Origin: Phaeosaccion multiseriatum
Taxonomy: Eukaryota > Protista > Ochrophyta, other classes
Length of the DNA: 64,000 nucleotides
Assembly (NCBI GenBank): GCA_965112735.1
Contig: OZ218954.1
Coordinates: forward strand, 4,278,001 to 4,342,000
Reading direction: 5' to 3'
This document shows positions 5,485-51,165 of the stretch, piece after piece. The position numbers and the translations under genes were made by a program. The notes under the pieces are model-generated. The model was not told the origin of the DNA. It was given only the letters and a program-made list of their open reading frames with translations, and ran no database searches. Positions within the stretch are counted from its first letter, which is position 1, and the number at the start of each line of letters is the position of its first letter.

Positions 5485-12447
<6,963 letters not shown>

Positions 12448-14554: not shown

Positions 14555-16570
14555 CCATCTCACGGCGCCTCTGGGGCAGACTGGCCCGCAGTTGCCGACA
14601 GGCCTCGGCCCTCACCTCCCTCGCCGATAGCCCTCGGCAGCGCTCTGGGCCCAGCACAGCGGCCATGCTGCAACTCTTCGTCTCCCTCCTCCTCCTCCTC
14701 CTCCTCCTCCTGCTCCTCCTCCTCCCCTTCCTCCCCCCCCCCCTCTCTCCCTCATGGTTGCACGGCTCGTCCGTGGAGGTGTGCTCGCTGATGCTCGGTC
14801 CCCGTCTCGTGGCGAAAGCCTTCAGAACTCCCTCCCCCCTTCTAACACCTCTATAACTATAAAATGGCTCTGTAGCCCCCACCTACCGCCGACCTATTTT
14901 GTCTCGCTCCGAATCAAGCGGGCTGCCTTCCCTTCCTTTTCCCTTCCCTCGCCCTCTTCTTCTTTCCTTTACTTACAAAATTACCACCACCATCTCCATC
15001 TTGCCCAGCCTTTCCTTGTCTTGGTAAAAAAACACGCCATTAACCCACCTCCTCTAATTCCTATCCGCCCCCCGCCCCCCCCCAAACTCCCCCCAAACAC
15101 ACCTTCTTACGCGATACGAGTGCGTGTGCCCGTCCGTACCCATCGACATTATATCGAGGATACTCTCTTGGCGACTTGGGCCCATACACATACATATACG
15201 GTATCGAGTCCCATATTCCCACCCCTCCCGCTGACTTAAGGGAAGTGATGTGGCACCGCTCGAAGCGGCCCGGTGCCAGCCGGAGCAGGCCTGCCCGTGC
15301 GAGGGAGGCGATACTTAACTCCCGTCGTTCGGCGAGCGGCAATGGGCGATCCTCTGTGCTGCTTTCCTTCTCCTCCTTCTCCTCCGTTTCCGCCGCCCGA
15401 GCCTCGCCGCGCCATATCGAAGCGCAGTCTCCTCCCAGCAGGGGCTGAGCCCTGCCGCTGCGTCCGCTCCTCCTCCTCATCATCCAGCTGCCAACACAGC
15501 CTCACTGCTGCCGGGGCGGACCCTTGCCTCTGCAGTCGCTCCTGCGACCCCTGGTTGGGCAGTCTCCTCCCACCCAGGCCTGACCCCTGCCGCTGCTGTC
15601 GCTTCTTTCGCTGCTGCTGCTCCGTATCCTGTTCCCGCTCCCAGGAGAGTCTGGTGGCGACCGGTGCCGACCCTTGCCGCTGCTGCCGCTCCTGGTCCTG
15701 CCCGCCATACCAGGGTCTCCTCCCGGCCGGTGCCGACCCTTGCCGCTGCTGCCGCTCCTTCTCCCAGTTGCTGTCGTCCTGCGATCGCCTCGTGGGGCGA
15801 GGTCGTCGTCCTGACCCCTCCTCCTCGCCTTTCTCCCGTTGCTCCAGCACTGGCTCGGAGCGTGAGAACCGCTGGCACGGCAGCGGTCGCCGAACCAGCC
15901 GCACCGTATCCTCCTTGGCCAAAAGATTCGTCTCGTCACTTGCTCGGCTCCGTCCGATACCGGCGGCCCCTGCGGCCCCTGCGGCGACAAGGGCTTCGCT
16001 CGACCTGCACCTGGAGAGTCGTGAGCAAGCGGCTGTCCCCTCCTCGGGCTCCCCCCTCCCTTCAACCATGTAGTCGTCCTCTGCGCTAACGGAGGTGGCC
16101 GAGGAGGACGAGCTGCCCATCCGGCTCCGAATCACCTCCAGGCCCTTCCTGGCCCTCGCCCTGAGTGCAGCAGCGATACCACGGCTACCACCGCAGCTTC
16201 CTCGCGTCGTGGTCTCGGCGCCACGGGCACTCACGACACTATCCTCCCCCGAGGCGCGGGACTCTTCACTCCCCCCCCTTCTGATAGCACCACTACCACC
16301 ACCGCCGCCATTGCCCCTAGCGGCAGGACTCGAACCTCCACTACGTGGGCCGCTTCTACCCGTGCTATGGGGATGCCTAAACTCCAGCACAGTGCTGGAA
16401 GAGGGTAGAGGCTCTGAGAAGAGTCTACTCAGCCGCATGCCTTCGACGCCCTCCTCATCGGCAGCTCGCGGAACTGCAGGCGACGTCCGCTGATTGAGCA
16501 TGACCCGCACTTCCTCATTCAGCACATTGTAGTAGGGGCTCGATTTTCTGCACAACGCAATCCCCGACAT
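14415..16570 (-). pseudogene. Disrupted or uncertain gene: Ser/Arg-rich RQQRQGSAP repeat region, apparent frameshift near 15410, 3' part ending in the fold-back
   Basis: 455-aa ORF with five RQQRQGS-type repeats; a protein-like sequence continues in another frame (AAETEEKEEK...YPRYNVDG, GT donor near 15139); last segment RLYEAATGVRFVVL resembles longin/sybindin-type ends. Joining these pieces into one gene is inference. Confidence 0.45.
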
Positions 16571-17003
16571 CTCCTCCCCCTCCTTCTTTTCGTGTTTCTC
16601 CAATCCAACTTCAACCCTTGTCGCTAACCGTACTGCAGGAGCAGCAGAGAGCAGCCGCGCTGAATGGAGACATCACTGGCCCATCTCTTCGACGGGGTTC
16701 TTCCCTCTCCTTACTTTATATTGATCTGTCGTTGATGCGTCTCGACTCCTGAAGCTCACGGCGCGAAAAACCGGGCGATATCGGTGTGCGTAGGAACACA
16801 CTAAGTCAACGGGACAACAATAAAAAACGGGGGGTACGTGTGCCATCCCATTCGCTTGAGTACTTTTTGATTCAAAACATCTGCACTCAACTCCTGTGCA
16901 GCTTGTACCATCCATGGGACTGCCCTCCCTCCCCCAATACAAGACAGCTGCACTTAGTAGTCCAAGCCCTATTTAAAGGGGGGGAAAGGAGGAGATGCTT
17001 TGA

Positions 17004-19427
17004 CTACGGATTACCACCCGTAGCCATGGAGGCCTCCACAGCAGCTCTTGCCGCCGCATGCGCCAAGGCTTGCACCATGTCTCTGGTCATGTTGCCCGCC
17101 CCCCCGGACCCCATGCTAGCCATGGCTTCGTCCGCAGCCTGTTCGGCCGCGTGGAGAATAAGGTCCTCCATGTTGACGCTTCCGTCGCTGCCCCCCCCCG
17201 CGTCATACTCAGCATTCCCCCCACCCGCAGCCCCCTCATCCCCTTCGTAAATTGCGCCTGCTGTCACATCCGTCCGGTGTCTCCGCTCCGCTTCCTCCTG
17301 CAGGGCCTGTACGACATGGGGGGGTAAGGTGGGGAGGACGGCCTGCATCGCCCGCTGCTGCATCTCCGCAGACTCCTCTTCGCTCATGCCCTCTTCTGCC
17401 TTGAGTGACCCTGGCCCCGACTCCACCAACGCCAACACGGCCTTGTCCACCGTTCCTGTGGTGTAGGTAGAGGCCGGGTTGTCGTACGGGTAGTCTGAGA
17501 AGCCGTCGCCAGTCGGCCCGTACGGAGAAGCCTGGCACCCCACTGACTCGGTTGGAACCACCCCACCACGGGCTCCCCTCTGCTGTCGTGCGCTTCTCCT
17601 CGTCGCGGCTCCTCTTGTCTCTCTGGTCGCCTGTGCTGCGTACGGCGCAGCTCCTGCGTGTGCTGCGTACACCTGCTGCTGCTGCAGCTGATATTGATTG
17701 TGCATCGCCGCTTGGGCATACCCGTATGCGCCAGCTGCGTATCCCCCCTGCAAGCATAGTAGTAAGGGCCGGGTAGAGGTATATGGGGAGGCCAGGGTAG
17801 AGGGAATGGGTCGCAGGGAGGAGAGAGAAGACAAGAGAGGGCTGAGGGGGGCAAAAAAAACAAAAAACAAAAAGAGAGGGAGAAAAAAGCAAAGCAAAAC
17901 AGCCGGATTCGATACGACAGGGCATGCATGCATGCAGGCATGAAAGGAGGGGGGGGGGGAGAGAGAGGTCCTCGGCCCCTCCTCCCAACCAGTGATACGA
18001 CCCTGCTCCGCTCCCTCCCTCCAAGCCTTCAACCAACCAACTCTTGAGCCGCAGAAAGAACACCAAAAAGTCGGTGCCAAGTCGGTCGGTTAAAGTACCA
18101 TCCCCCAGGACCAATCACTCACTCACTACGCACCCCACTCAGTCCAATACGTAACCATTAGAAAACTACCCCAGTCAAGTCCAGTCCAGTCCAGTCCAGT
18201 CTAGGCAAGTCACCAAATTACCCCCCCCCCCCCCCCAAAACCCACAGCCCAATCTCACCTCCAGCTGCCCGGGTGGCACGTCACCTTCAAGGTACAGTGT
18301 CTGCTCCCTCCTGGGGTTCGTGTCGAAACTCCGCATGGTAAGGAAGCCGGTCTCCTGCAGCTGCCGATTGGCCTCCTCCACCGCTGCCCCGGCCTCTGCC
18401 TCCTTGTTAAACATGCCCACGAAGTAGTCCTTGCACTTATACGTCACTCTGGCGCGGTACCTGAGGAGGATGAGGAGGGGTTGTGACTCACTGTGACCGT
18501 GACTATGACCCACACACACCCTCACATATCCACAAAACACCACACCACACCTCACCCACCCAACCCCACTCTCCCACTCCGCCCCCCCCCCCCCCCAAAA
18601 CGCAAACACGCACGCACTCAGCTACGCACACCCCACCCCACACACACACATACACGCACCTGCCCCTGTAGTAGGTGACATTTCGGTAGGTGGGAGACAA
18701 AAAGTGGCCGAGTCGGGTACCGTACTCCCTCCGCTGCCTCCAGTTGCGGTCGCGTTTGTTGGATATCGGCCGTAGGGTGCGACCCCTCTCCTTGCTCTGC
18801 CTCTTCTCCAGGGGGGTTTGGTCGGCCCACGCGCACAAACGTCGGAGATTGCGTGCCAACATCAGCCTCAGTTTCTCCTGTGAGACAGAGGATTAGAGGA
18901 TTAACACGGCAAGAGGGAAAAGGTCAGAGGACAAAGTAACGTCAGCTTCTCATGCTTGAGCGTGCCATTGGATGGGATTGCTTGACCAATCAACTACATT
19001 CAATCAAGCTCAGTCAGTTTGTTTCGGCGTTGTCCTTTGGGCCGTGGTAGTTGCCCACTTCAGGGCTGCAGCACCTGAACGCTGTCGCCTGGGGCTAAAC
19101 GAAACAGAGGAGGGAAAGGTCCCATTCAATTGAGTCCATCGGAAGAGGGCGGAGGAAGCTGCCCACCTGGCTAGGTGCAGCAGCCAGGGCGAGCGTCTCG
19201 CTCCCCGTCGCCTCCCCCATTCCGTCCCCTCATCCTCTCCCTCCCTTCTTCCATCGCCTCACCTCTCTGATGATGACATCGTTGTTGCCGGTGCTCCTCT
19301 GCTCGGGCGTGAGCTTGGCAAGCTGCATGAGCTCCGCCATGGCGCGGCTGTTTCTGTCCAGTAGGTACTCTACCTCCACCGTGTCAGAGGCAGGCCTCGC
19401 GCTGGGCACGACCGCCGTGCTCGCCAT
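17004..19427 (-). CDS. SS18/SSXT-like N-terminal domain + AP2-like DNA-binding domain + Q/Y/G/A-rich tail
   Basis: Four exons in consistent phase: 19427-19263, 18877-18660, 18460-18259, 17747-17004. VEYLLDRNSRAMAEL...LMLARNLRRLCAWAD (SSXT pattern); SPTYRNVTYYRGRYRARVTYKCKDYFVGMFNKEAEAGAAVEEA (AP2 pattern). Confidence 0.75.
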
Positions 19428-20231
19428 TCTTCCCCTTCTTCTCGCTACTTAGTACTGAGGGGGAGAGCCCGCACCCCCTCCTTTCCTGCCGCGACCCTAC
19501 CCCCTTCCCCCTTTCCTCTGAGCTGGGCCAGTGCTGTCTCCTATTCTCCTGCAGTGCTCCCTCTTGCGTCTCTCTCTTTCTCTCCCCCCTGCTGAGGTCG
19601 GGGGGCGGAGCGGAGCAGAAAAGGAAAGGAGGCAGTTGAGAAAAGGGTCACGGCAAGGGCAGAAGGAGGGGGGGAAGGGATGGTCAATGAAATGCGGCAC
19701 AAGAGGCCGCAATAGATTGAGTGCTAGCCCCTCTTCTCCTCGAACTTTTCTCTCTCCTGCCCCAGTTGCCGTTTGAACAAATACCCGAGGGAATACAAGA
19801 ACTAGATGGATGCGGTCCCGCCACGCTTCCAAGAAGAGATCTCAAACATGCATCTCCATCTCACCTCAACCTCTACACTTCGCAGCTGCCACAAAAGAGG
19901 CTACTTTTACTGTCGCAAAAGGAAAATCAGGATCAGGCACCTGCTTCGGTTTCCAGTCTGAGGTTGTCGGTCACACGTTGTGGGTGGAGATGGGTCAACA
20001 CGATTTCAACCCCCCCGCGAAAGAAAACTGAAAGCAAGGTGCTGCAAGGAGGAGGCAGCATAGAAGCAAGGGCGCAGGAACAGCAGCAGTAGCAGCAGCA
20101 GGGGCGGGAGAAGCGAGTATCTTCGGAGGGAGGGAAGAGAGAGGGAAATAAAGGTTGATATCCTCCTTCAAAGTACGTTGTGTTTTTTTCATTCTTCAGT
20201 GCCTCCTCCTCCTGCCCCCCAGAGGTCGGCC

Positions 20232-23089
20232 ATGACAGCAGGTCCTTCTGCTGGCTCACGGCGTGGCACTCTGCTGGGAGGGGTGGGTGTGTTCGCCCTG
20301 TGCGCATGGCAAGTTGGCGGAGCAGGAGCAGCAGTTTCGGGGGGGCGGCATCAGCAGCAGGGGAGAAGGAGCATTAACGCCTTTGTCGGTGGTGGGAGTG
20401 TAAGGAGCCTGCGTAAGCAAGGACCTGGCAGTAGGGGTGTCAGCAGGAGGGTTGGCAGCAGTGCGCGCCGCGAGGAGGCGGGAAGACCTGCAGCAAGCAG
20501 ATGGAACAGAGGGAGGAGCATTAGCAGTAGCACCGGCAATAGTTTGATTGTAGAGGCCTACGGGGTTGATGGTAGCAGGCGATCGGCGACAGCAGCAGCC
20601 GGGCCACCGTCAAAAAGATCAATGAGGGGAGGAGGGTTCCTGGCGTCTGCGTTGGGCAAGGTGGTCGACCGAGTGGAGTCGGCTCGCACCCGAGTGAACC
20701 TCGGACCAGTTGGTGATATGGTAGCAGCACCGGCACCAGCAGCAACCCCCACCACCACAACGGAGCCGAAAGTGGGGATCGAAACTGTCTTCAGTACGAC
20801 GCCAAGCAAGCTCCGTCAATTCTTAAAAGTTACCAGTTTTTTTGTGGTGAGTCATGATGATGATGCATTCGTGGGGGCGAAATGAATAAAGGGGAAGGAA
20901 GGAAGGAAGGAAGGAGGGGAGGAGGGGAGGAGCGAGGAGCACGACGGGTGCGTATTGGGCCTAAAGGGTCTCCTTGCTTCAGGGCCTCCAGTGTCTCAAG
21001 CCAGCCACATCCCCTCCTGTCCCCTCCTTCTACGCCCACCTCCTCGTATCTGTCTCTGCCTGTGTACCCACCTCTCAGCTGTGGTACACCTTCAACGTGG
21101 GGTACAACATCTTTAGTAAGCTTGCACTGAATCAAGTGCAGCTTCCATGGACCATGGCTGTGGTGCAGCTTCTCACGGGTAAGTGAGACCAAGTGAGAGA
21201 GAGACTCTTCGCCAAGGGGGAGGAGCAACAACCACGCCAATAACCTAAACAGGACTCTACTAGAGTCTGACAGCGGGCGCCCCTCTTTCGTGGATACAAC
21301 CTCCTTCCTTTTTACTTCTTTCCTTTGTCCGTCTGTAACTGCTGCTCTCTGAATAACTACTACTACTACTACTACCACTACAACTACAATTGACAACAAC
21401 ATCAAAACATCAACACCCCCCCCCCCCGCAGGCATTCCTTACGTAATGTTCTTGTGGGCAACGGGCCTGAGGAAGAGACCTAAGGTCAACCTCTCGCACA
21501 TTAAAGTCATCACCCCTCTCGCCCTTATGCACATGTGCGCACACCAGGCCGCAGGTCAGTAAGTCAGTGAGGGGGAGGAGGAGGAGGAGGAGGAGGAGGC
21601 ATATGGGCAAGCACACAGGCACCTGCCATGTGCACACACATGCACAACACACGCACGCACACTCACAGCCCCACCAGCCCACCTCCATCCACACACACAT
21701 AGTCATCCACCCACCCCCGCCCACACAAAGCCGACGACCCCACGCCCTCTCCCCCCCAACGAACGACTTCCCGACCCAACCCAACCCAACCTAACTTCAA
21801 CCCTACCCTACCCAACCACCACCACAACCACCACTACACAAAACAGTCATCAGCATCAGCGCAGGGGCAGTGGGCTTTGTGCAAATCGTCAAGGCTGCTG
21901 AGCCCATCTTCACCAGCGCATTGAGTGCCATCTTTCTACGCCAGCTCCTCCCGCCCTTTGTGTACCTCACACTGGTGCCGGTGGTGGGCGGGGTGGCACT
22001 TGCCTCTCTTAAAGAGCTGTCCTTTTCTGTAACAGCTTTTTTGGCGGCGATGGTGTCCAATACTTGCGCGGCGAGCCGGAGCGTGTATGGGAAGGTGTGC
22101 ATGGGCAAGGACAAGGGGGAGAACATGGACGCCGGAAACCTGTAAGTAGTAGGGGATGTGGTGGGCGGGGGTGGGGGGGTGTGGTGGTGGAGGAACAAGA
22201 GAGCCATAGTACCGATGTGGGGGGGGCGTAGAAAAGCAAGCTACGGAAGCTAACTCTCTCTTGCTTCTCTCTCTCTCTGTTTTTCTCTCTATCTCTATCT
22301 CTTGTTTCTCTTCGCGTCCTCCTTTACCTTGCTTGCTGCTCTTGGTCCGTAGGTATGCGGTGATGACGCTCATCGCTTCCCTAGTGCTGGCACCCATTGC
22401 GTGGTCTCAAGAAGGTGCGAAGAGTAGAGTGGGCGTGCATATGGGCAGACAGGCCTGGTGGTTTGATGAGGAGGTGCCCAGTCTCTCCTCCCCGTACCCA
22501 TCTTCTCACCCTTGTACACGCATGTACATCACGCACGCACATCTATCCATTTATCTCCTCCTCCTCCTCCTCCTCCTCCTCCTCCTCCTCCTCCTCCTCC
22601 TCCTCCTCCTCCTCCTCCTCCTCCTCCTCCTCTTCCTCCTCCTCCTCCTCAACAGGGCGCACCGCTCGCGCAGCGTGGGACGCGGCCATTGCCGGTGGTG
22701 CCAATGCCGCTCGGCTGAAGCAACAGTTCCTCCTCAGCGGGATGTTCTTCTACCTGTACAACGAAGTGGCGTTCTACTGCCTCAATGAGATTCACCCGGT
22801 CACGCACGCAGTGGGCAACACCATGAAGCGGGTGGTGATGATCGCGGTCAGCATTTTGTTTTTCAAGCACCACTTTACGCCCTTGGGAGCCGTTGGAGGG
22901 GCTACGGCCATTGCTGGAGTGTTGAGCTACAGCCTTGCGAAGGCGCATGCGGACAGAGGCTTGAAGAATAAGGCTGCGGTAGCGGCGGCGGCAGGAGGTG
23001 ATGGCGAGGAGGGGGGCGGCGATGACGACGGCAGCGGAGTGGAATTGCTCAGCGGTTGGGGTGGAGAGGAAGACATCGAAGTACTCTGA
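20232..23089 (+). CDS. Plastid phosphate translocator (triose-phosphate transporter family)
   Basis: Motifs LWYTFNVGYNI, GAVGFVQIVKAAEPIF, LVPVVGGVALASLKELSF, FYLYNEVAF, HPVTHAVGNTMKRVV across six exons; about 200-aa N-terminal extension with a hydrophobic stretch followed by an S/R-rich region. Confidence 0.93.
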
Positions 23090-24071: not shown

Positions 24072-25082
24072 CTACACGTCACAAATCGTAACAACTCTCG
24101 ATCGCTGAACTCTCTCCCACTGGAGCTGCTCGCTGCCCTTCTTGGGCACCACAAACGGCATGTGACCAGAGAAGTCCGCGTTGGGGGTCATTGGCTTGTA
24201 AATGTATCTCTTCCAACGGAGGGAGCGGTTGACGCGTACTATTCGCCTCGTCTCGGCGAGATCCATCTCCCTGTTTCTTCTCCTCTCTAAACCCGCAATT
24301 AGGAAGGCACCAACAGCTCTGAAGCAGGTTCGCATGAGGCGCCATCTTTTACGAACGAGGAGTCGAGTTTCTTCCTGCTCCTTCTTCTTCCCCCTCTTCT
24401 TCTCCTCCTCCTTCTTCTTCCTCTTCTCCTTCTTCGTCTTCTTCTCCTCCTCCCCCTCCTTCTCCTCCTCTCCCCCCTCCTCCTCCTCCTCCTTCTCCTC
24501 CTCCTCCTCCTCCTCCTCCTCCTCCCCCTCCTTCTCCTCCTCTCCCTCCTCCTCCTCCTCCTCCTCCTGCTCCTCCTCCTCCTCCTCCTCCTCCTCCTCC
24601 TCCTCCTCCTCCTCCTCCTCCTCCTCCCTTCCCCCCCGCTCCTCGTCCTCCTCCCGGAAGAAGATGAGGACCTTCTTGCTGCGGGTCCCTCTCCCGGGTG
24701 GCGGCGTATTCGGTGCAGTTGCGGTGGTATTGGAAAACAACTTCTTCTCTTCCCGGTGGATCAGACTGTGCTTCTGGGACAGCTCTCGGCGGTGCTGCCT
24801 TTTCCTCGCATTTCGAACGAAGCGCCTCGCCAGACTGGCAACGGATGCCACAGACGCAAGGCCGGGAGAAGGCGGGGGAACCTGCTCTTGGGCTTGTTGG
24901 AGGCGGAAGCAGAGGAGATCCCGCTCTCGTTGGAGAGCCCCTGTTGTGGACAGGGACCTCCCTCCCCCCAAAGTTGAGCCGATCTCAAGCTTGAACTCAC
25001 ACGACTCGCCCTCCGTCCCGTTGTTGTCGTCTCCCAGCTTCTTGACCGGCCTCTCCTTCATGGAAGTCTGACTCTCTCCCAT
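24072..25082 (-). CDS. Hypothetical protein with central poly-Glu/Lys tract
   Basis: Uninterrupted ORF with non-repetitive flanks (ASLARRFVRNARKRQ; RKRWRLMRTCFRAVGAFL); no family recognised. Confidence 0.5.
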   Translation of the reverse strand: MGESQTSMKERPVKKLGDDNNGTEGESCEFKLEIGSTLGGGRSLSTTGALQRERDLLCFRLQQAQEQVPPPSPGLASVASVASLARRFVRNARKRQHRRELSQKHSLIHREEKKLFSNTTATAPNTPPPGRGTRSKKVLIFFREEDEERGGREEEEEEEEEEEEEEEEEEEQEEEEEEEGEEEKEGEEEEEEEEEEKEEEEEGGEEEKEGEEEKKTKKEKRKKKEEEKKRGKKKEQEETRLLVRKRWRLMRTCFRAVGAFLIAGLERRRNREMDLAETRRIVRVNRSLRWKRYIYKPMTPNADFSGHMPFVVPKKGSEQLQWERVQRSRVVTICDV

Positions 25083-25879
25083 CGTCCCCGCTTGCCCCAG
25101 GGCCCCAGGCTCGAGGTAGAGGTTGTCCGCTGAGCTTCGACATCTCCGTCTCTGTCCTTCTGACAGTCGCAAAGGGGGCAGTTGCGAAGGCCACAGCCCG
25201 ATTCTAGTCGACATTCAGTCGTCGCTGCACAAGGTCTTGTGTACGTGAAAGTAGAGTATAGAGTGAAAGGTTTTATGTTCTTTCCCCCGCTCCTATGTGG
25301 GCTTTTGCTTGCTGCTTCCGCAATTGAGTGCAGCGTATACGTGGTGTGTTCGTTGCGTCCTTTGGGGCCTAGGCGTGGCTTGACGTTCGAAAACAAGGTC
25401 AACAACAAAGGAAGAAAGGAAGAAAGCTTTCAACGGATGGCAGCTGAAGGGGGTTTTATGTGTAACGGCATTCGATTTATCAATTTATCACAGCCGTTAC
25501 TCTCAGTTTTCCCCCGGTTGGTTCAATCATGCTGGGAATCATGCGCCTTTATAAGCCGCTCTAAAAAGCGTGCTCGCTCAAGCTCAGCGACTTAGCTCAA
25601 TGCGTGCTCCATGTTCAGTCTAGTCGAGAGGGAGAGTCGAGGTGGTCGAGTCGGAGAGTCGAGAAGCTACCGAAAACGCAGCCACGTACCGGACCTGTCC
25701 TCCCGGCCTTCCCAGGAGTACCCGCCCGCTCTCCCCCTCTCTCCATTGATACAGTCTCTATTTGGTTAGAAAACTGGATGAGAAATTCATCTAAACTTCC
25801 TTCCCTCTCGCAACTCGCTCCTTCCCAGCACCTCATCGCTCGTTTCCCGGGTGCCCCCCCCCCTCCGGCGTGTTTCCCA

Positions 25880-30119: not shown

Positions 30120-33100
30120 TGTGCTTCCACGACCTTCCCACACGGGCACGTGGTGAGGCTGAAACTGAAATTGACACACGCCTCCCCCTGCCCCCCCCCC
30201 CCCACCCCCTCCCCGACAGATACTCTCCCACGAGCGACTATTGCCCGTTCTCCTACCCGCCCTACTGCGTGCCACACACTCAGAGGTGCTTTTCAGGCTC
30301 TATGAGGCGGCGGAGTGGGGAACGCCTTCCCCTCAGCATCAGCATCAGCCTCAGTCTCAGCCTCAGCCAGTGCTGCCCTCAAGGTTCAGGGTACTGTCAC
30401 AAAGCTGGCCAGCTCTGGCGGGGACGTTTTCGCATCTGGCGAGGAGGGGAGGGGAAGGGGAGAAGAAGCAGGGGCAGGGGCAGTTTTGGCAGGCTTTCTC
30501 GTCTATCCAGAGCATTCTGCGGCTGGGGGAAGAGGGAGAAGTTGAGAATCATAGAGGAGGAGGAGGAGGAGAAGGACATACAAGTGGGAGAAGGAGGAGG
30601 AGGAGGAGGAGGGGTGATGCCTGCTGCTCGCCTTCGATGCTTGCGGCGGCCTTTGTCGCGGCAGGAGGCATGCTGCACGGCCTGGCAGGGCGTGTCGTTG
30701 CCTCCTCGGATACCGCTGCTCCTTACGATGATGATTCTGCGGGAGGGACAGGAGAGGCAAGACAAAGAGCAAGTAGTGGAAGTAGAAGAGGAGGAGGAGG
30801 AGGAGGAGGAGGAGGAGGAGGAGGAGGAGGAGGAGGAGGAGGAGGAGGAGGAGGAGGATGGGAGGAGGCGGTGAATGCTGGTCTATGGGAGGCCTCTTGG
30901 GCTCTCGCCCCACTGCGGACGTTGCTGGACGCCTTGCTGGGGAGGGTGCGGAGGGGGACTGTTCGGACTGTTCCCGCTGGAGGGGAGGAGGAGTGGGGTC
31001 AGCCTGCCTGCCCTGCCAGCTGTGAGTGGGATGTTACGTCTGCGGCGGTGTTTGGGCTTGCCTATGGCTCTACGCAGTTGATTGGTCCAGGAGCAGCAAC
31101 AGTACCAAATCGTGATAGAGCAGTTGGTAATACAGAGGAGGCACTTGGTGGGCTTGATGTGGACAGCATCATCGTGGCGCTGGGAAGCTGTGTGCACCAG
31201 GGGCCGGTGGCTCGACGCTTAGCCTTGGCAACGGCTGCACCAGCAGAAGTACGTTCTTCAGTTGGTTCTTCAGCAGGACGGACGCCGCTGCTTGTGAGCG
31301 TGTATGCAGCTCTGGGTGCGCTTCTCTCTCGGCCCCGCACACGGCCACAGACGCGCCTGCATGTGCTCACACAGGCTCTTGCGGCTGCGAGAGGCGCCCA
31401 TGTGGCGAGGAGGCTTCATCAACGCGCCACCGCCGCCCCTGTGAGTGAGAGTGACTGTGGTGGTGGTGGTGGTGGTGGTGGTGGAGGAGGAGGAGGAGGA
31501 GGAGCAGGCGTCGCGGGGAAAGATCCTTCGCTGCGCACGTCGACAATGCTGACGGAGGGAATGGAAGTCGGGTTAGGGATGGGGACTGAGATTGGGATTG
31601 GGCCTCTGCCCACAGAGCTGTTGTCGAGGGTGCTCTTGGCCTTTGTGGGGCCGTTGGTGGCGTCTCTGCAATTCAGACTGCGGAGGTGCGCCGCTGCTGC
31701 TGCTGCTGCTGCTGCTGCTTTAAACTCCTCCTCGAGCGACGCACCGCCCCGTGGGTACTTCCCTGTGGAGGATGAGGAAGGCGAAGGAGCGGTGGCGCTG
31801 CTCTGCGTGGAGCTGCTATCGCTCTGCGCTGCCCCTGGTGGTCGGGGTCAGGGTCAGGGCCCTCCACCCTCGGGGCAGGCGTATCAGCAGCAGCAGTATC
31901 AGCAACAGTTGATAGTACAGCAGCAGCAGCGGCAGCAGTTGGTCCTTCAGCGTCTGTTGGAGTCGCTTGACGAGTGGCCCTTTCTTCAGCTGGCGGTGCT
32001 GTCTAGAGTGTCCACTCCAGAACTGTTTGAAGAAGTACACGGAACGGCCGCAAGGGGGTGCGAGGGCTGCTGGCTGGTACGATACAGTACAAGTAGGGCA
32101 GGGGTAGGGCCGATGGGAGAGGGGGGTGAGGAGGAAGAGGAGGAGGAGGCTGATGATCGCAAAGTAGCAGCCCTGCGAGCGGCTTGGGTGCGGCAACGGC
32201 AGCGAGAAGAGCAGGGGCAGCAAGTGCAAATGCGAGTGCACAGAGGAAACAATGGCAGTAGATGGGGTGGGTTAGCGCAGCTGGTGGAGCTGCACGGAGG
32301 AGGAGGAGGAGGAGGAGGAGGAGAAGGAGGAGGAGGACTGGCGACTGGGGGTTGCGCTCTTAGGGACGAGGAGATGGGAAGCAGGTTGGTGGTGCACCTG
32401 CAGGCCGCTCACAGATGGCTGGGCAGTGTAGGCCACTTCGCCGCTCTGCCAGCCTCCTCGCCCATCCTAGCGCCACTGCTCCTGTATCACCAACTGCGCG
32501 AGGATGAGGGGGGGGAGAAGGGCATGACTGCCATGTACATAGGAAACGGGCATAGGCGCGAGCAGCAGCCAGAGGGAGGAGGAGGAGGAGGAGGAGGAGA
32601 AGGAGGAGGAGGAGGAGGAGGAGGAGGAGGAGGAGGAGGAGGGGTGGTGTGCGTCAACTTGGTCGGGCTCCTCCTCTCTCTCTGCCAACACACGCTGGAC
32701 CCGTGTAATGCGCTGGCCCACTCTCTGCTGTGGCAGGTGCTGAATCAGCCCTACCTCCTCCAAGCCGCCGCTGCTGCTGCTGCTGCTGCTGCTGTATCAC
32801 CAACTACTGTAGGAGATGGAGATGGAGATGGAGAGAGCCTTAGAGGGAGGCTCGCGTGCCGATACGCGGTCGCCGCTGCCCAGAGCTTCCCCACGGCTAC
32901 CTCAGCATCCAGCCTGGCCACTGCGGTTGGGCTTTTAGTGGGCGGACTTGGGTATCACAGGACCATGCAGAGCGCCGCCCTGTACACTGTGGGGGTGCTG
33001 AGAGCGAGGGCGCTGCAATTGCTTGGTAATGTTGGTCGTCATGATGCTGCCGCAGCAGTTGGTCATACAGCAGCAGGTGTTGGTGGCGGGGAGGGGGAGG

Positions 33101-33581
33101 CGGCAGGGGTGGGGGTTCTTGCTCTCCTTTTCGGTCTACTCAAGGTGTGCTCACTGGACCTTCTTCCTCACCTCATGTCCGAAGTAGAGCTGCTGTTGCT
33201 TGGCGACGACCTGTCACCAACCCACACAGAGCGGGCCTTTTCCGTGCTCTACGACTCCATCTCGCATCGCTGTGAGCCGGGCCGGAGGAATGACTTGGCC
33301 TACTGGTATCTCCGATTGGCGAATCAGCATGAGGCGCTGGTGATACGGCAGCAGCAGGAACAGCAGAAGTTGGTGGTACAGGAGCAGCAGCAGCAGAGAG
33401 ACGGGGTGAAGGTGGCTCCGGGAGAAGGGAAAGGGGGGGGAGAGCGCGGGGGAGGAGCGGGAGGAGCGGGTGGGGTGGGCGGTGCAGTTGGCGATACAGC
33501 AGCAGTACTTGGTGATGCAGCAGCGGTTGGTGATACAGAAGGGTCGAGACGGGAGACTGTCGGCGCTTCTTCCTCTCTCAG

Positions 33582-33616
<35 letters not shown>

Positions 33617-33681
33617 GTCAACCACGAAGGGGACAGAGGAGTGTGGTAATTTCGCCCAGTGGGATGCAGAGCATGCTGTAG
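28514..33681 (+). CDS. Large helical-repeat protein, PEX8-like, C-terminal PTS1-like tripeptide SML
   Basis: Long terminal exon; blocks ALAHSLLWQVL, YAVAAAQSFPTATSASSLATAVGLLV, LLKVCSLDLLPHLMSEVELL and LYDSISHRCEPGRRNDLAYWYLRL follow the pattern I recall for PEX8 C-termini; ends -SML*. Upstream exons approximate. Confidence 0.65.
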
Positions 33682-39944: not shown

Positions 39945-41336
39945 CTAGCTGCAGGCTCCCAACAGGCGGGCCGCCAGATCAGCCTTAAGGCCCTCGGTTG
40001 ACATTTCTCTCTTCGACAGCTCTTTTTTCAAATCTGAAACCCTGAGAGCCTTAATTTCCGCCGCGCTCAGAGCTCCTCCTCCTCCTCCTCCTCCTCCTCC
40101 TCCTCCTCCTCCTCCTCCTCCTCCTCCTCCTCCTCCTCCTCCTCCTCCACCTCCTCCCCCTTCTCCCATGTTCAAGAGTACTACTCCTATGTTTATATTT
40201 GCTACTCCTACTCCTCCTCCTTCTCCTCCTCCTCCTCCTCCTCCTCCTCCTCCTCCTCCTCCTCCTCCTCCTCCTCCTCCTCCTCTTCCTCCTCCTCCTC
40301 GTCCTCCTCCTCCTCCTCCTCCTCCTCCTCCTCCTCCTCCTCTGGCTCCCAACAGGCGGGCCGCCAGATCAGCCTTAAGGCCCTCGGTTGACAGTTCTCT
40401 CTTCGACAGCTCTTTTTTCAAATCTGAAACCCTGAGAGCCTTAATTTCCGCCGCGCTCAGAGCTCCTCCTCCTCCTCCTCCTCCTCCTCCTCCTCCTCCT
40501 CCTCCTTCTCCTCCTCCTCCTCCTCCTCCTCCTCCTCCTCCTCCTCCTCCTCCTCCTCCCCCTCCTCCACCACCACCTCCTCCTCCTCCTCCTCCTCCTC
40601 CTCCTGTTCCTCCTGCTCCTCCTCCTCCTCCTCCTCCTCCTCCTCCTCTGGCTCCCAACAGGCGGGCCACCAGATCAGCCTTAAGGCCCTTGGTTGACAG
40701 TTCTCTCTTCGACAGCTCTATTTTCAAATCTGAAACCTTGAGAGCCATAATTTCCGCCGCGCTCAGAGCTCCTCCTCCTCCTCCTCCTCCTCCTCTGGCT
40801 CCCAACAGGCGGGCCACCAGATCAGCCTTAAGGCCCTTGGTTGACAGTTCTCTCTTCGACAGCTCTTTTTTCAAATCTGAAACCCTGAGAGCCTTAATTT
40901 CCGCCGCGCTCAGAGCTCCTCCTCCTCCTCCTCCTCCTCCTCCTCCTCCTCCTCCTCCTCCTCCTCCTCCTCCTCCTCCTCCTCCTCCTCCTCCTCCTCC
41001 TCCTCCTCCTCCTCCTCCTCCTCCTCCTCCTCCTCCTCCTCCTCCTCCTCCTCCTCCTCCTCCTCCTCCTCCTCCACCACCACCTCCTCCTCCTCCTCCT
41101 CCTCCTCCTCCTCCTCCTGCTCCTCCTCCTCCTCCTCCTCCTCCTCTGGCTCCCAACAGGCGGGCCACCAGATCAGCCTTAAGGCCCTTGGTTGACAGTT
41201 CTCTCTTCGACAGCTCTTTTTTCAAATCTGAAACCTTGAGAGCCATAATTTCCGCCGCGCTCAGGAGCTCCTCCTCCCCTCCTCGTCCTCCTCCTCCACC
41301 ACTAGTCTGGGACATCTTCTTGTCGTAGTTGCACAT
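39945..41336 (-). CDS. Five tandem SAP domains joined by poly-Gly linkers
   Basis: LSAAEI(M/K)AL(K/R)VSDLKKELSKRELST(K/E)GLKADL(V/A)ARL five times, all in frame; true start may lie in upstream exons. Confidence 0.8.
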   Translation of the reverse strand: MCNYDKKMSQTSGGGGGRGGEEELLSAAEIMALKVSDLKKELSKRELSTKGLKADLVARLLGARGGGGGGGGAGGGGGGGGGGGGGGGGGGGGGGGGGGGGGGGGGGGGGGGGGGGGGGGGGGGGGGGGGGGGGGGGGGGALSAAEIKALRVSDLKKELSKRELSTKGLKADLVARLLGARGGGGGGGGALSAAEIMALKVSDLKIELSKRELSTKGLKADLVARLLGARGGGGGGGGGGAGGTGGGGGGGGGGGGGGGGGGGGGGGGGGGGGGGGEGGGGGGGGGGGGGGALSAAEIKALRVSDLKKELSKRELSTEGLKADLAARLLGARGGGGGGGGGGGGGRGGGGRGGGGGGGGGGGGGGGGGGGGEGGGVGVANINIGVVLLNMGEGGGGGGGGGGGGGGGGGGGGGGGGGGGGGALSAAEIKALRVSDLKKELSKREMSTEGLKADLAARLLGACS

Positions 41337-42119
41337 GGCTGAGCTTCCTGTCCCCCGCAGAGGAGATGGGGGGAGGGGGGCAGAGGGGGGGCGAGAGAGA
41401 GGCAGAGCAGGGGGACGGGGAGAGAGAGAGAGAGCGAGAGAGAGAGAGAGAGAGAGAGCGAGGACAGAGAGAGGAGGGAAAGGGAATTGAGCAGCACAAG
41501 CGTTACTTTGTGCGCAGTACAAGCGCGCATGGTGTTGGTGTTGAAAGACTTACGAGCAAGTCTTCAGGCCTCCTCGTCTTCAGGCCTTCTCGCTAAAGAG
41601 CGCCACCCCTTCTTCCCTCCCGCACCCTCTCCCTCCCTCGCTCCCCCCTTCATTTCCTCCCTCCCTCCCTCCCTCATTTACTCCCTCCCTCCCTCCCTCC
41701 CTCACTCACTCACTCACTCACCACACAAGTTGTTTGAAGGACTTGCTTGATTGTGCGAGAGCCTTTTGTGGTGTGTGCTTGATATTGTGCGAGAGCTTCG
41801 GTTTATTTATTTCCATTTTCTGTAAATTTTGTTCACGAGCGCCGATTGAGGATTGAGCAAGCGCCGAGAAGGGCGACGGAAGTCAACAATTCCATCGCAC
41901 TGAAACGCAAACCAAAAGCCCTCCCTTCTTCCGTGCTTCTTCCCATTTTAGAGGGTACTTCCTTCTCTGCGAGGAAGCGTGGGACTACTACACAGTACTG
42001 GGGAGGAGTTTCAGAACTGTCGCGCAACGTGCATCATCTTTGCAATAATACCATTTGAACAGTGGCACAGCACCAACAGGGAGAGAGAGAGGGGAGGCGT
42101 AGAGGGCAGCAGCAGCTAG

Positions 42120-44595
42120 ATCATCGCCTTCAAGCTCCCTCCCAACCTGACAGACTCGGAGCTGGGGAAGGCAGACCGACTCTGCGTGCAAGACAGCGTA
42201 GACCTCCGGGAGGAGAAGGATGCGTCTGCGCTGCACGACCGTTTGGATGAGTTGAGGGAGAGCGTACTCGGCCGGGGCGGTGGAGAGGGGTGCGGTGAAG
42301 ATAGAGTGGAGGATGGGAATGGCCATCACGACGGCGTGGCTTCCATCGCAAGCCAGGAGAACTTCTATCTGATGTACTGCTTCGTGAGGTGAGTGGGTGC
42401 TTGTGCGCGGCCGCACGCGGCCGACACTTCAAAAATGTAACAGGATGGATGAGGGGAGATGGGGGAAGCGGAGCAGCAAATTTAGCAAAAAGGAGGAAAG
42501 GGAGAGAGGAGGGACGCTTTATAAAACGGGGCTCGCGATCTTGGCTTCCCTCCCACCGAACCCCTCCTTTCCCCACTCCGCCCCCGCCCCCACCCCCTCC
42601 TTTCCCCTCTCCTCGCGAAAACAGGGACTTTCGACACGTGCAGGGTTCCGTCCAGAAGGGGGTCCTTGACACGCTCGAATGCGTGGTGGAGGACCTTGTC
42701 CAGCACATTGAGCCCTCGCCCTTGTCCCAGCAGGCGCGACGCAGGGCCAGGGGCAAGAGATGGGGGGAAGACTGGGCTTCGGCGGGCATGAAGCAGGAAG
42801 GCCGGGACACAGGAGCAGAGGACAGTGGGCAGGGGCAGGGACAGGGACAGGGTCAGTTCCTGCAGGTGAAAAATGCCTTCCAGATTGCTGTCTTCTTTCT
42901 GTTTACGGTCACGATGAAGGCCGAGGCCGTCTTCTCCAACAGCAAGGAGAACGAGAGTCTCGAGAGACAAGCCAACGGGAGAGGGGGAGGGGCGAGAGGC
43001 GGCAAGAAGAAGGGCCCCGCGGCGGGCGGGGATGCCGCAGCAGCAGCAGCCGCGGCGGCAGGAAGAGAGCTTCAGTGGGAGACCGCGAGAGAGGGAGCGC
43101 TGTCCATCCTAGTGGAGGCCCTTCGCTGCGACCGCTCCCGCTTGTGGCACTTGGGCATCCCTGCGGAGGACTTTGTGAACCTCTTCCTCCGCTTGGGCTA
43201 CAGCCTACTCGAGCTGCCCCACACCATGCTCGCAGGTAGCAGGCTCGTCAAGCTGCTGGCCTTTCAGCTCGTGACGCTGTCTTTCCAGGCTTCGCAGAGT
43301 GTCACCGCAGGGGTCAGTGCATGCATCTTACAAATGGTCAACGCGCACGATCACCTTCCCCCCGCCATGGCGGAGTTGTGCAGAGGGCTGGCAAGGGGCG
43401 AGCACAGGGACTCCCGCCTTGCCGCCGATTTGCTGAGAGAGCTCGGCAGGATGGACCTCAACCACGCTGATGCAGGTGCGTGCGTGCAGACGACACGGGG
43501 AGAGGTTGGAGAGAGAGAGAGAGAGAGGCAGAGAGAAGGGGAGATTAAGAGGGGGTGACTCGTTGGTTCATTCGAGTGGGCCCACCCAACCTCTGCGGCC
43601 TTGCAGGGACTTGTCTATACCTGAGACTGTTTGGGGGGGTTGGCGCTTCCTACCCAACCTACCCCTTCCCCTCTATCTCGTCTCGCACCTCTCTTCTTTC
43701 TTGGACCCCTTGGGCCTCCTCCTTTCTAGGGCGGCGAGGCTGTTCTTCGCTCCTATCCCTTGCCTCCCGTCCCCCTGCCCAGTCCTCCCCTCCCTCCCCT
43801 CACTTCCCTTCCTCCCCCCTCTCCTCTCCTCCCCGCCCCTCCCCACCCATCCTCAGTCCTGACACACCTCCCACCCTGTTCTGACACCCACCCACCCCAC
43901 CCACCCCCTCTGTCCTGACACCCACCCACCGACCCTGTCCCGCCCTCAGGCAAGAACGCTGCCGGAGTGCGTAACATGTCCAAGTTCCTTGAGGAGATGA
44001 GCACTGCCTTGCCCGGTGTCGTGCTTGCCAACCTCTCTGTACTGCTGCCTCACTTTCAAAGCGAGCCCTATGCCATTCGCAGCGCGCTGGCGGGCTGTCT
44101 GGCCAACATCCTCTGTGCGGGTGCCGAATATGAGAGGAGGGAGAAGGATCATGCGGCCGGCAGGGCAGTGGAGCAGGAGGGGGAGGAGGAGGAGGAGGAG
44201 GAGGATGGAAGCGATGGACAGGTAGGAGGGGAGGGGCTTCGGCGCATCGTAGCGCGAGAGAGGAACAGAGACAGAGAGAGAACAGAACGTCTGGGGGGGC
44301 AATGTGTTTTGTGTTTTTTTGAAGGTTTGTTGCGGTGCAAGTTGCTGCCCCGCCCCCCCCCCCTCTGTAACTAATGCCCATCCACTGACATCCACTGCCA
44401 TCCCATCCCATCCCATCCCCTTCATCCATCCACCCAGGTGAAGGTTGATACCAAGACGCGAGACAAGCTGCTGGACATTCTGGAGAAGCGTGTCAGGGAC
44501 GTCAACGCCTTCTCTCGATCCGCCGTGCTCAAGGCCTGGGCCACCCTCAGCGAGGAGAGGGCCGTTCCGCGCAATCGAATCCAAGATGTCGCCAG
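42120..44595 (+). pseudogene. NCAPD2: Condensin I subunit CAP-D2 (Ycs4/Cnd1) N-terminal part, truncated
   Basis: LWHLGIPAEDFVNLF, LAADLLRELGRMD, GVRNMSKFLEEMS, LLPHFQSEPYAIRSAL, RDKLLDILEKRVRDVNAFSRSAVL; expected start reads ATC after an in-frame TAG; no further CAP-D2 exons seen after the 44596 donor. Confidence 0.85.
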
Positions 44596-49830: not shown

Positions 49831-49837
49831 GGTAATG

Positions 49838-49881
<44 letters not shown>

Positions 49882-50199
49882 CGTTCGGCTGCTCACACTC
49901 ACGTAATACGGTGTGGAATAGAAATTCTTCCTCCAAGCACGCGATACGATACTTTCAAATCCAATTTCCTTGCCGACGCGACCCCCTGAGACCCCCCACC
50001 TCATCGAACCTTGATCGAACCTCACAAACCCGTGGTTGGAGGTCATTTGTGATTTCTCGTGGGACGAGGTGCGTCTCACGGGGCTACTGCGGGCGGAAGG
50101 GAGACTCCACACTTTTTCTTTGTTTAGCTTCGGTTGTATCAAATTGATGAAAGGGATGATAACAGATTCAATCCACAAAAGAACCGCGCCGCAAAATGG

Positions 50200-51165
50200 A
50201 GACGGCACTACGGGCCCTCCCTCCTTCGCTTCCTCGTCGGCAGGTCGTCCGTCTCCTTCGCCAGCCCGAAGCCGTACAGCGTCATGAGCGCCTTCACTTC
50301 CCTCGACATGCATGGCCTCGATACAGAAGAAGCCCACTCCTTCAAAACCTGCTCCGCTCTCACCTCGTCAAACAGAGCCTGCTCCGCTCTCAGCCTTCAC
50401 ACGCTCCCTCTTGCTCTTTCCTGATACCTCACCACTGCCACTCCCACTACCTCTTCCGTCACCGCCGCCATCAACCCCCTCGGAGCTGCTACTAGGCTAC
50501 CACTGACGCCAGCCCTGCCCGCCGTGCTCAGCTGCCCATGAAGCTCTCCTAGCGAGGGCTCTACCGCAGCTCGCGCCGACACATGCGCCACGGTTTGCAC
50601 CATGTCTCGGGTCAAGTCGCCCGTCCCCCCTGACCCCATGCCGGCCATGGGCTCGTCCGTAGCCTGCTCTGCCGCCTGGAGACGAGCTCCTCTACATTGA
50701 CGCTTGCGTTCCCGCTCCCTCCGTCGTCCACGTAGTCCCTGTCCTCAGCATCTCCCTCACCCCCATTCCCAGCCCCGCCACCTACATGAGTACGCAGACT
50801 CTTGACGCTACCCGTCGTGACGAACTGCACCACAGCTGCAAAGCCCTCCTCCGTTAAGTCCACTCCGTCAAACGTCATCTCCACCTCGTCCTTGCCCTTG
50901 CCTTTGATGCCCATGAAGCCACGCCCCGCCGGGTCCAGCATGGTGGGGAGACTGCCTGCAGCCGTGTCATGCCTGTCTAAGCGGTTAGACCTTCCTCCCC
51001 CTCTGCTCAATCTTGCTCATCAGCAGCTCCCATCTACCGAGTACACTCGTACCACACGGCCCTCCTTGGCGGCCTCAGAATAGGCAGAGCCGGAAGAGAT
51101 GTGTCGAGCTATGGCGTTGCAAACATCACTAGAAGCATCTCGCACCGCTTTCTCTCTCTCTTCCT
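50200..51165 (-). pseudogene. Third ankyrin-BTB copy (BTB part only), chimeric with a foreign segment
   Basis: 50800-51150 and 50200-50490 match the intact gene's 3' end; 50550-50780 instead matches 17025-17235. Confidence 0.85.

What the first reader, a model, noticed from the sequence alone, without database searches (positions are those of the whole stretch)
17004..19427. SS18/GIF-type SWI/SNF coactivator domain fused to an AP2 DNA-binding domain
SS18/GIF proteins normally lack a DNA-binding domain and are recruited by partner factors. Here an SSXT-like helix pair (LLDRN...LARNLRRLCAWAD) is followed by an AP2-like domain and a Q/Y/G-rich stretch like the SS18 activation region. All splice phases are consistent. 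Inference: a sequence-specific factor that plugs directly into SWI/SNF.
Basis: partly seen in the sequence, partly recalled or inferred. Interest (0 to 1): 0.75.

Follow-up and report, generated by a model that had tools for sequence, protein, structure and literature searches.

The report
Algal AP2-domain transcription factor gene
A four-exon gene in a genome related to brown and yellow-green algae encodes a probable DNA-binding regulator with one AP2 domain; the proposed built-in SS18/GIF (SWI/SNF-recruiting) module rests on one 20-residue match at noise level, so this is most likely an ordinary, lineage-specific AP2 factor.

Summary
The gene model holds. On the minus strand, four exons (19427-19263, 18877-18660, 18460-18259, 17747-17004) are joined by GT..AG introns with fitting phases. 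Third-codon-position GC is 0.69-0.86 in the exons against about 0.6 in the introns. The product would be 442 aa.

The AP2 part is supported. A search of exon 3 against 1.84 billion proteins gave 7 hits, and 6 are multi-AP2 proteins that pass Pfam's AP2 cut-off. A profile built from their repeats scores exon 3 at 28.5 bits (best shuffle 5.7). The fragment folds as two strands plus a helix, and its best structure match, though not significant, is a plant AP2 domain.

The SS18/GIF (SSXT) part is not supported. Only a 25-aa piece of the second helix touches Pfam SSXT (E 0.17, 11.9 bits, cut-off 26.2). An obviously spurious hit on the first helix scores better. No window over the first helix hits SSXT.

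The "activation" stretch is 40 residues and alanine-dominated. No ortholog was found anywhere. A neighbouring gene places the genome near Xanthophyceae/Phaeophyceae.

Both domains straddle introns, and the joined protein was not searched, so SSXT remains possible but unlikely (about 0.1).

Verdict: new member of a known kind; modest interest.

The parts
19263..19427 (-). Exon 1 (aa 1-55), starting at the ATG at 19427. There is an in-frame stop 8 codons upstream. The donor is GTGAGG and the exon ends in phase 0.
   Evidence: third-position GC 0.855
19314..19373 (-). N-terminal amphipathic helix-prone segment 1 (aa 19-38, contains LLDRN).
   Evidence: Hydrophobic moment 0.56-0.60. No SSXT hit in 11 windows; only a spurious Hda_lid hit at E 0.06-0.07.
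18878..19262 (-). Intron 1 (385 bases, GT..AG). It splits the N-terminal helical region.
18660..18877 (-). Exon 2 (aa 56-127 plus two bases of codon 128). It is very basic (net charge +14, 16 Arg).
   Evidence: third-position GC 0.778
18812..18871 (-). Amphipathic helix-prone segment 2 (aa 58-77, contains LARNLRRLCAWAD). It gives a weak sub-threshold match to Pfam SSXT profile positions 38-57 of 62.
   Evidence: E 0.17, 11.9 bits, cut-off 26.2; hydrophobic moment up to 0.72; no PDB sequence match
18698..18811 (-). Arg/Lys-rich linker (aa 78-115). It is a probable nuclear-localisation and DNA-backbone-contact region (inferred).
   Evidence: Composition; no family hit
18352..18691 (-). AP2-like DNA-binding domain (aa about 118-164), interrupted by intron 2. 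The first strand (TYRNVTYY) lies at the end of exon 2. The second and third strands and the helix lie in exon 3.
18461..18659 (-). Intron 2 (199 bases, GT..AG, phase 2), inside the AP2 domain.
18259..18460 (-). Exon 3 (last base of codon 128 plus aa 129-195).
   Evidence: third-position GC 0.806
17748..18258 (-). Intron 3 (511 bases, GT..AG, phase 0). It holds a (CCAGT)n microsatellite and poly-C/poly-G runs.
17004..17747 (-). Exon 4 (aa 196-442 plus the stop codon).
   Evidence: no relatives found
17628..17747 (-). A/Q/Y/G low-complexity stretch (aa 196-235).
   Evidence: A14 Q8 Y6 G5 P1
17007..17522 (-). Acidic Ala/Gly-rich C-terminal region (aa 271-442, net charge about -20). It is a putative activation region (inferred).

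Best explanation
This is a real, intron-containing nuclear gene of an ochrophyte (heterokont) alga. It encodes a 442-aa transcription factor with a single AP2 domain.

The DNA-binding module is an AP2 fold: a three-stranded sheet packed on a helix, at aa about 118-164. It is preceded by a strongly basic linker that probably supplies nuclear import and extra DNA-backbone contacts. The N-terminal 80 residues form two amphipathic helices that most likely mediate a protein-protein contact (self-association or a cofactor). They are lineage-specific, with no demonstrable family membership. The C-terminal half (a short A/Q/Y/G stretch followed by a long acidic Ala/Gly-rich tail) most likely acts as the activation region.

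Shown here: the exon structure, the coding signal, AP2 homology of exon 3, and the absence of detectable orthologs. Inferred: DNA binding, nuclear localisation, the role of the helices, and activation by the tail.
For: - Gene model: canonical splice sites, fitting phases and third-position GC periodicity. The homology-supported neighbouring TPT gene has the same kind of GT..AG introns of a few hundred bases.
- AP2 by sequence: exon 3 searched against 1.84 billion representative proteins gave 7 hits at E <= 1e-3 (best 5.1e-9). Six of them are proteins with 2-5 Pfam AP2 domains above the gathering score (37.9-117.6 bits against 33.3).
- AP2 by profile: a profile of their 26 repeats aligns exon 3 residues 2-33 to profile positions 18-49 at 28.5 bits, against a maximum of 5.7 in 1000 shuffles. 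It is the only hit in the six-frame translation of the whole window (E 3.2e-7).
- AP2 by fold: AlphaFold with a 7-row alignment gives strand 2-7, strand 10-16 and helix 20-36 at pLDDT 82-88. The top Foldseek PDB match is the Arabidopsis TEM1 AP2 domain, and WRINKLED1 AP2 aligns at 1.4 A over 34 columns.
- Splice junction: the exon 2 tail plus the exon 3 head reproduce the spacing of the short-loop AP2 repeats of P0002 ([FY]xxVT, four residues, then R[WY][KR]Ax[IV]xY) (by eye).
- Precedent: AP2-EREBP factors are already known in heterokont algae (6 in Nannochloropsis, PMC3499364; stramenopile AP2 survey in PMC4117751).
Against: - Pfam's own AP2 model does not hit exon 3 or the exon 2 tail when searched exon by exon.
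- The exon 2 tail alone is not significant against the AP2 profile (-1.8 bits).
- The Foldseek matches have E > 1.
- The custom profile was built from proteins picked because they match exon 3, which inflates its score somewhat.
- No transcript evidence and no ortholog was available to confirm the splicing.
Confidence: 0.68

Rival explanations
1. One reading: the N-terminal helix pair is a divergent SSXT/SNH domain (SS18/GIF type) fused to an AP2 domain, so one polypeptide both reads DNA and docks onto the SWI/SNF ATPase.
For: - For the 25-aa helix-2 piece, SSXT is the only Pfam family reported out of 24,736. It aligns to the expected C-terminal helix of the profile (positions 38-57 of 62).
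- The segment lies near the N-terminus, preceded by another amphipathic helix carrying an LDxN-like motif.
- From memory (a lead, not a test), LxRNLxxLxAxADxxP matches the most conserved SNH motif of plant GIFs.
- SS18-type subunits are inferred for the last eukaryotic common ancestor (PMC9170682). One is found in the Toxoplasma SWI/SNF complex (PMC13377188). The family is therefore not excluded from the SAR supergroup.
Against: - The hit is E 0.17 and 11.9 bits, against a gathering score of 26.2.
- Across about 25 short windows of this gene (many overlapping), only two regions gave any Pfam hit: this one, and a better-scoring, clearly meaningless Hda_lid hit. That is what chance predicts.
- Eleven windows over helix 1 give no SSXT hit.
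- Whole exons 1 and 2 give none at E <= 10.
- No PDB sequence match.
- The loop between the helices is longer than I recall for SS18/GIF (from memory).
- The 'QPGY-like' stretch is 40 aa, Ala-rich and has one Pro.
Confidence: 0.12
2. The locus is not a functional gene as modelled: it is a pseudogene, a mis-joined set of ORF fragments, or part of a differently spliced gene.
For: - No self hit, ortholog or fragment was found in 1.84 billion representatives, in the word-index database or in JGI metagenomes.
- No transcript data were available.
- Exon 4 is largely low-complexity.
Against: - There is an intact reading frame across four exons with canonical sites and consistent phases.
- The third-position GC excess is strong exactly in the modelled frame and absent in the introns.
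- The exon 2/3 junction restores an AP2 domain with the spacing seen in real AP2 repeats.
- The ATG is preceded by an in-frame stop.
Confidence: 0.12
3. The AP2 segment is a remnant of a mobile element (AP2 domains ride on homing endonucleases and integrases in bacteria, phages and some protists) rather than part of a host regulator.
For: - The closest relatives are unnamed multi-AP2 proteins from metagenome contigs.
- Two of them show weak NUMOD1 (homing-endonuclease-associated) signals.
Against: - No endonuclease, integrase or transposase domain was found in this gene or in the flanking ORFs that were scanned.
- The gene has spliceosomal introns, one of them inside the domain.
- Its composition is like the rest of the window.
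- It is a single copy in the 64-kb window.
Confidence: 0.05

Closest known systems
AP2/ERF-superfamily (AP2-EREBP, Pfam PF00847) transcription factors of stramenopile algae and other protists, including multi-AP2 proteins
   Same: Exon 3 carries the second strand, third strand and helix of the AP2 domain. It is significantly similar to bona fide AP2 repeats. The predicted hairpin-plus-helix fragment is best matched by plant AP2 structures. Heterokont algae are known to have a handful of such factors (PMC3499364).
   Different: It has one AP2 domain, whereas its nearest relatives have 2-5. Tyr replaces the usual Trp in the second strand, and the loop between strands 1 and 2 is short. Pfam's own model does not reach the exon pieces. 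The N- and C-terminal regions have no detectable relatives.
ApiAP2 factors of Apicomplexa and perkinsids
   Same: Both are AP2-domain regulators in the SAR supergroup with long, poorly conserved, low-complexity flanks.
   Different: Published phylogenies group stramenopile AP2 domains with the plant, ciliate and dinoflagellate types rather than with ApiAP2 (PMC4117751). No ACDC or other ApiAP2-associated domain was found.
SS18 / GIF (AN3) SWI/SNF-associated coactivators (Pfam SSXT, PF05030)
   Same: Both have an N-terminal helical region. One 20-residue helix aligns to SSXT profile positions 38-57. A Q/Y/G-containing stretch lies downstream.
   Different: The score is far under the family threshold (11.9 against 26.2 bits) and at noise level. 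The first helix is not recognised. SS18/GIF proteins have no DNA-binding domain (PMC6507847). The Q-rich region here is short and Ala-dominated.
Fusions of a DNA-targeting protein to SS18/GIF: engineered GRF-GIF chimeras in crops and the oncogenic SS18-SSX fusion (from my own knowledge, not checked here)
   Different: Those are man-made or somatic fusions with a canonical SNH domain. Here the SNH identity itself is undemonstrated.

Membership tests
AP2 domain (Pfam PF00847) | Match to the Pfam AP2 model at or above the gathering score (33.3 bits) | tested here: inconclusive
   Searched exon by exon only. There were no hits at E <= 10 for exon 2, exon 3, or the 25-36-aa pieces. The domain is split by intron 2, and the joined protein was not searched.
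AP2 domain (Pfam PF00847) | Significant sequence homology to proteins that are themselves AP2 members | tested here: met
   Six of the 7 hits in 1.84 billion proteins carry 2-5 Pfam AP2 domains. A profile of their repeats scores exon 3 at 28.5 bits against a shuffle maximum of 5.7. It is the only hit in the six-frame window, at E 3.2e-7.
AP2 domain (Pfam PF00847) | Fold: a three-stranded antiparallel sheet packed against one helix | tested here: inconclusive
   The exon 3 fragment is predicted as two strands plus a helix at pLDDT 82-88. The top Foldseek match is the TEM1 AP2 domain, but E is 1.4; WRINKLED1 aligns at 1.4 A over 34 columns. The first strand lies in exon 2 and was not folded together with the rest.
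AP2 domain (Pfam PF00847) | N-terminal 'YRG' element (first strand) at the right distance from the second strand | tested here: inconclusive
   By eye, the exon 2 tail (YRNVT) has the spacing of the short-loop repeats of P0002. Alone it scores -1.8 bits, no better than shuffles.
AP2 domain (Pfam PF00847) | Sequence-specific DNA binding | not testable with these tools
   This needs DAP-seq, a protein-binding microarray or EMSA.
SSXT / SNH domain (Pfam PF05030; SS18, GIF) | Match to the Pfam SSXT model at or above the gathering score (26.2 bits) | tested here: not met
   Whole exons 1 and 2 give no hit at E <= 10. The best result is 11.9 bits, E 0.17, for a 25-aa piece of helix 2. Power is low because the region is split by intron 1 and the joined protein was not searched.
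SSXT / SNH domain (Pfam PF05030; SS18, GIF) | Both helices match the profile in order (N-terminal LDEN-type helix, then the RNLxYLAxIAD-type helix) | tested here: not met
   Helix 2 aligns to profile positions 38-57. Eleven windows over helix 1 give no SSXT hit, only a spurious Hda_lid hit.
SSXT / SNH domain (Pfam PF05030; SS18, GIF) | Long C-terminal Q/G (plants) or QPGY (animals) transactivation region | tested here: not met
   There is only a 40-aa stretch with A14 Q8 Y6 G5 P1, followed by basic and acidic regions. The definition is taken from PMC6507847.
SSXT / SNH domain (Pfam PF05030; SS18, GIF) | Binding to the SWI/SNF ATPase or to QLQ-domain partners | not testable with these tools
   This needs co-IP, two-hybrid or co-folding with the organism's own Snf2/BRM protein, whose sequence is not in the window.

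The most novel reading that the evidence does not exclude
The N-terminal helix pair is a highly diverged SNH/SSXT module. This ochrophyte would then carry a natural single-chain fusion of a SWI/SNF-docking module and an AP2 DNA-binding domain, a sequence-specific factor that recruits the remodeler without an adaptor.
Probability: 0.1. Interest if true: 0.65.

Novelty: new member of a known kind. Interest (0 to 1): 0.27.

Why it matters
As it stands, this adds one more AP2-type regulator to the small repertoire known in heterokont algae. Its flanking regions are lineage-specific and it has no detectable ortholog in current protein collections. That is useful for annotating the genome but not surprising.

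It would matter more if the N-terminal helices proved to be an SNH module. That would be a natural counterpart of the engineered GRF-GIF chimeras and of the SS18-SSX fusion. It would also give a direct handle on how SWI/SNF is targeted in stramenopiles, where almost nothing is known. The present evidence does not justify that reading.

Tried and rejected
1. Pfam on each whole exon: no family at E <= 10. The test has low power because both putative domains straddle introns.
2. PDB sequence searches with exons 1, 2 and 3 and with the helix-2 piece: only chance hits or none.
3. Word-index protein search with exon 4 (inside the stop-free ORF 17007-18080, so that proteins of 197-626 aa were eligible): none. 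The same search with exon 2 (inside 18506-18892; 71-226 aa eligible, which covers GIF-sized proteins): none at E <= 1.
4. Two metagenome DNA scans, with exon 3 and with exon 2: pattern matches only, with no relative confirmed by tblastn.
5. Single-sequence AlphaFold of exon 3: pLDDT 58.6, uninformative. It was replaced by the run with alignment A1.
6. A second, degenerate AP2 sheet in the basic linker of exon 2 (NKRDRNW...LGHF): looked plausible by eye but scores -2.5 bits, like shuffles. Rejected.
7. Hda_lid hit on helix 1 (E 0.06): rejected as chance. It served as a yardstick for the SSXT hit.
9. A literature search for SSXT plus AP2 plus fusion returned four papers. By title and abstract none describes such a natural architecture; they were not read.
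10. The joined (spliced) protein was not handed to any tool or built in any script. I also had no tool-derived SSXT sequences from which to build a local profile.

Full report
**What is in the sequence.**
The finding's coordinates enclose a minus-strand coding sequence. It starts at the ATG at 19427, with an in-frame stop eight codons upstream, and ends at a stop codon at 17006-17004.

Reading the three minus-strand frames gives four exons:
- exon 1, 19427-19263 (55 aa);
- exon 2, 18877-18660 (72 codons plus two bases);
- exon 3, 18460-18259 (one base plus 67 codons);
- exon 4, 17747-17004 (247 aa plus the stop).

All three introns (385, 199 and 511 bases) begin with GT and end with AG, and the phases fit. 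The product would be 442 aa.

Third-codon-position GC is 0.86, 0.78, 0.81 and 0.69 in the four exons but only 0.58-0.61 in the introns read in the same way. That is a clear coding signal in the modelled frame. The neighbouring, homology-supported transporter gene has the same kind of GT..AG introns of a few hundred bases. No transcript evidence was available.

**Where the window comes from.**
The window is eukaryotic, at 56-64% GC, with no tRNA or Rfam hit. Its ORFs include ankyrin, SAP, KH, condensin, CDC45-like and triose-phosphate-translocator domains.

A translocator exon at 22712-22957 finds Tribonema minus, Discosporangium, Ectocarpus and Heterococcus proteins at about 56-67% identity. 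Local tblastn gives up to 74% for another exon. The source is thus an ochrophyte (heterokont alga) near the Xanthophyceae/Phaeophyceae. It is not one of the species in the protein collection, and it is not human.

**The AP2 half.**
Both proposed domains straddle introns.

Pfam finds nothing in any whole exon at E <= 10. PDB sequence searches find nothing relevant.

The exhaustive search of exon 3 against 1.84 billion representative proteins gave only seven hits at E <= 1e-3 (best 5.1e-9). Six of the seven are proteins with two to five Pfam AP2 domains above the gathering score. The seventh is a low-complexity repeat protein. Each single repeat matches exon 3 at only 8-17 bits, so the significance comes from the repeats adding up.

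I built a profile from their 26 repeats.
- It aligns exon 3 residues 2-33 to profile positions 18-49 (second strand, third strand and helix) at 28.5 bits. The best of 1000 shuffles reaches 5.7.
- It hits nothing else in the six-frame translation of the whole window (E 3.2e-7).
- The profile is somewhat circular, because its members were chosen for matching exon 3. Their AP2 identity, however, is independent of that choice.

AlphaFold with a seven-row alignment (A1) predicts strand 2-7, strand 10-16 and helix 20-36 at pLDDT 82-88. The top Foldseek PDB match is the Arabidopsis TEM1 AP2 domain, and WRINKLED1's AP2 aligns at 1.4 A over 34 columns. All of these matches have E > 1, as expected for a 36-residue fragment.

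The first strand would come from the end of exon 2 (TYRNVTYY). By eye it has the same spacing to the second strand as the short-loop repeats of P0002. Alone it is not significant (-1.8 bits).

I conclude that the gene encodes one genuine AP2-type domain split by a phase-2 intron. AP2 factors are already known in heterokont algae (PMC3499364; PMC4117751).

**The SSXT half.**
The two quoted motifs lie in two amphipathic, helix-prone segments: aa 19-38 and aa 58-77.

To give the family scan its best chance, I cut short windows by reference.
- A 25-aa piece over the second helix returns Pfam SSXT as its only family. It aligns to profile positions 38-57 of 62, at E 0.17 and 11.9 bits, against a gathering score of 26.2.
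- Eleven windows over the first helix return no SSXT hit. They return a better-scoring and plainly meaningless Hda_lid hit at E 0.06-0.07.
- Ten control windows elsewhere in the gene return nothing, including the real AP2 core.

Two lessons follow. First, hits at E of about 0.1 occur by chance at roughly the observed rate in this gene (two regions among about 25 overlapping windows), so the SSXT hit cannot be told from noise. Second, the exon-wise scan is too weak to exclude a diverged domain, because even the supported AP2 core is not seen by Pfam in this way.

Other searches of the N-terminal region were also empty:
- the helix-2 piece has no PDB sequence match;
- exon 2 has no relative among proteins of 71-226 aa, a range that includes GIF-sized proteins;
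- exon 2 has no relative in JGI metagenomes.

The 'SS18-like activation region' is 40 residues with A14 Q8 Y6 G5 and one proline. It is followed by a basic patch and a long acidic Ala/Gly-rich tail with net charge about -20. This is generic for activation regions and does not resemble a QPGY or QG domain in length or composition.

From memory, the second helix shares about half of its residues with the most conserved SNH motif of plant GIFs.

**Prior plausibility.**
A 2019 review states that GIF/SS18 occurs in green plants and animals but not in other protists (PMC6507847). Later work infers the subunit in the last eukaryotic common ancestor (PMC9170682). An SS18 homologue has also been reported in the Toxoplasma SWI/SNF complex (PMC13377188). 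An SSXT protein in a stramenopile is therefore not excluded in principle.

I found no paper describing a natural SSXT-AP2 architecture. The search returned four papers, which I judged from titles and abstracts only.

**Relatives.**
No ortholog, paralog or self hit was found for any exon. The nearest relatives of the AP2 core are unnamed metagenomic multi-AP2 proteins at 30-47% identity over the matched stretches.

**Mechanism proposed.**
- The AP2 sheet inserts into the major groove, as in the solved plant AP2/ERF-DNA complexes (established knowledge).
- The Arg-rich linker just upstream (exon 2 net charge +14) probably gives nuclear import and backbone contacts.
- The N-terminal helices probably mediate self-association or cofactor binding.
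- The acidic tail probably activates transcription.

Only the AP2 homology and the composition are shown here; everything else is inferred.

**Verdict.**
The locus is a new member of a known kind, a lineage-specific single-AP2 factor of a heterokont alga. I put the fusion reading at about 0.1. It is testable with cDNA, a profile search on the cDNA-derived protein, and an interaction assay.

Noticed in passing
window 21431-22957 (+); possibly also 20178-20885 (+): A triose-phosphate/phosphate translocator gene has at least three homology-supported exons, 52-74% identical to Tribonema and Ectocarpus proteins. It is transcribed divergently from the AP2 gene, and it gives the taxonomic placement of the window. 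The ORF at 20178-20885 may be its targeting-peptide exon; this was not checked.
   Followed up: partly
window 39948-41522 (-): A 525-aa open frame has five SAP-domain stretches (Pfam SAP, E 7e-46). I usually see SAP as a single copy, so this tandem array stood out.
   Followed up: no
window 15239-16603 (-): A 455-aa open frame just downstream of the AP2 gene has several repeats of a QQRQGSAPA-type motif, matching a 66-base tandem repeat at 15609-15758. It has no Pfam family.
   Followed up: no
window 30241-33678 (+): A 1146-aa stop-free frame has no Pfam hit at E <= 1e-3. It is the longest open frame in the window and lies in a region of strongly positive GC skew.
   Followed up: no
window 47755-50337 (-), 42389-43555 (+), 24075-25214 (-), 7396-8790 (-), 5538-6137 (-): These are other recognisable neighbours: an ankyrin-repeat protein, a condensin subunit 1 N-terminal domain, a weak CDC45-like match, a KH-domain protein, and a weak PIP5K-like match.
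   Followed up: no
window 18171-18211, 22555-22650, 22254-22302: Microsatellites lie inside introns: (CCAGT)n in intron 3 of the AP2 gene, and a 32-copy CTC array and a CT run inside the translocator gene. Long poly-C and poly-G runs are common in the introns of this window.
   Followed up: no
P0001-P0005 and P0007 (metagenome proteins, JGI/IMG): The nearest relatives of the AP2 core are unnamed proteins made almost entirely of 2-5 tandem AP2 domains. P0002 and P0004 also show weak NUMOD1 signals.
   Followed up: partly
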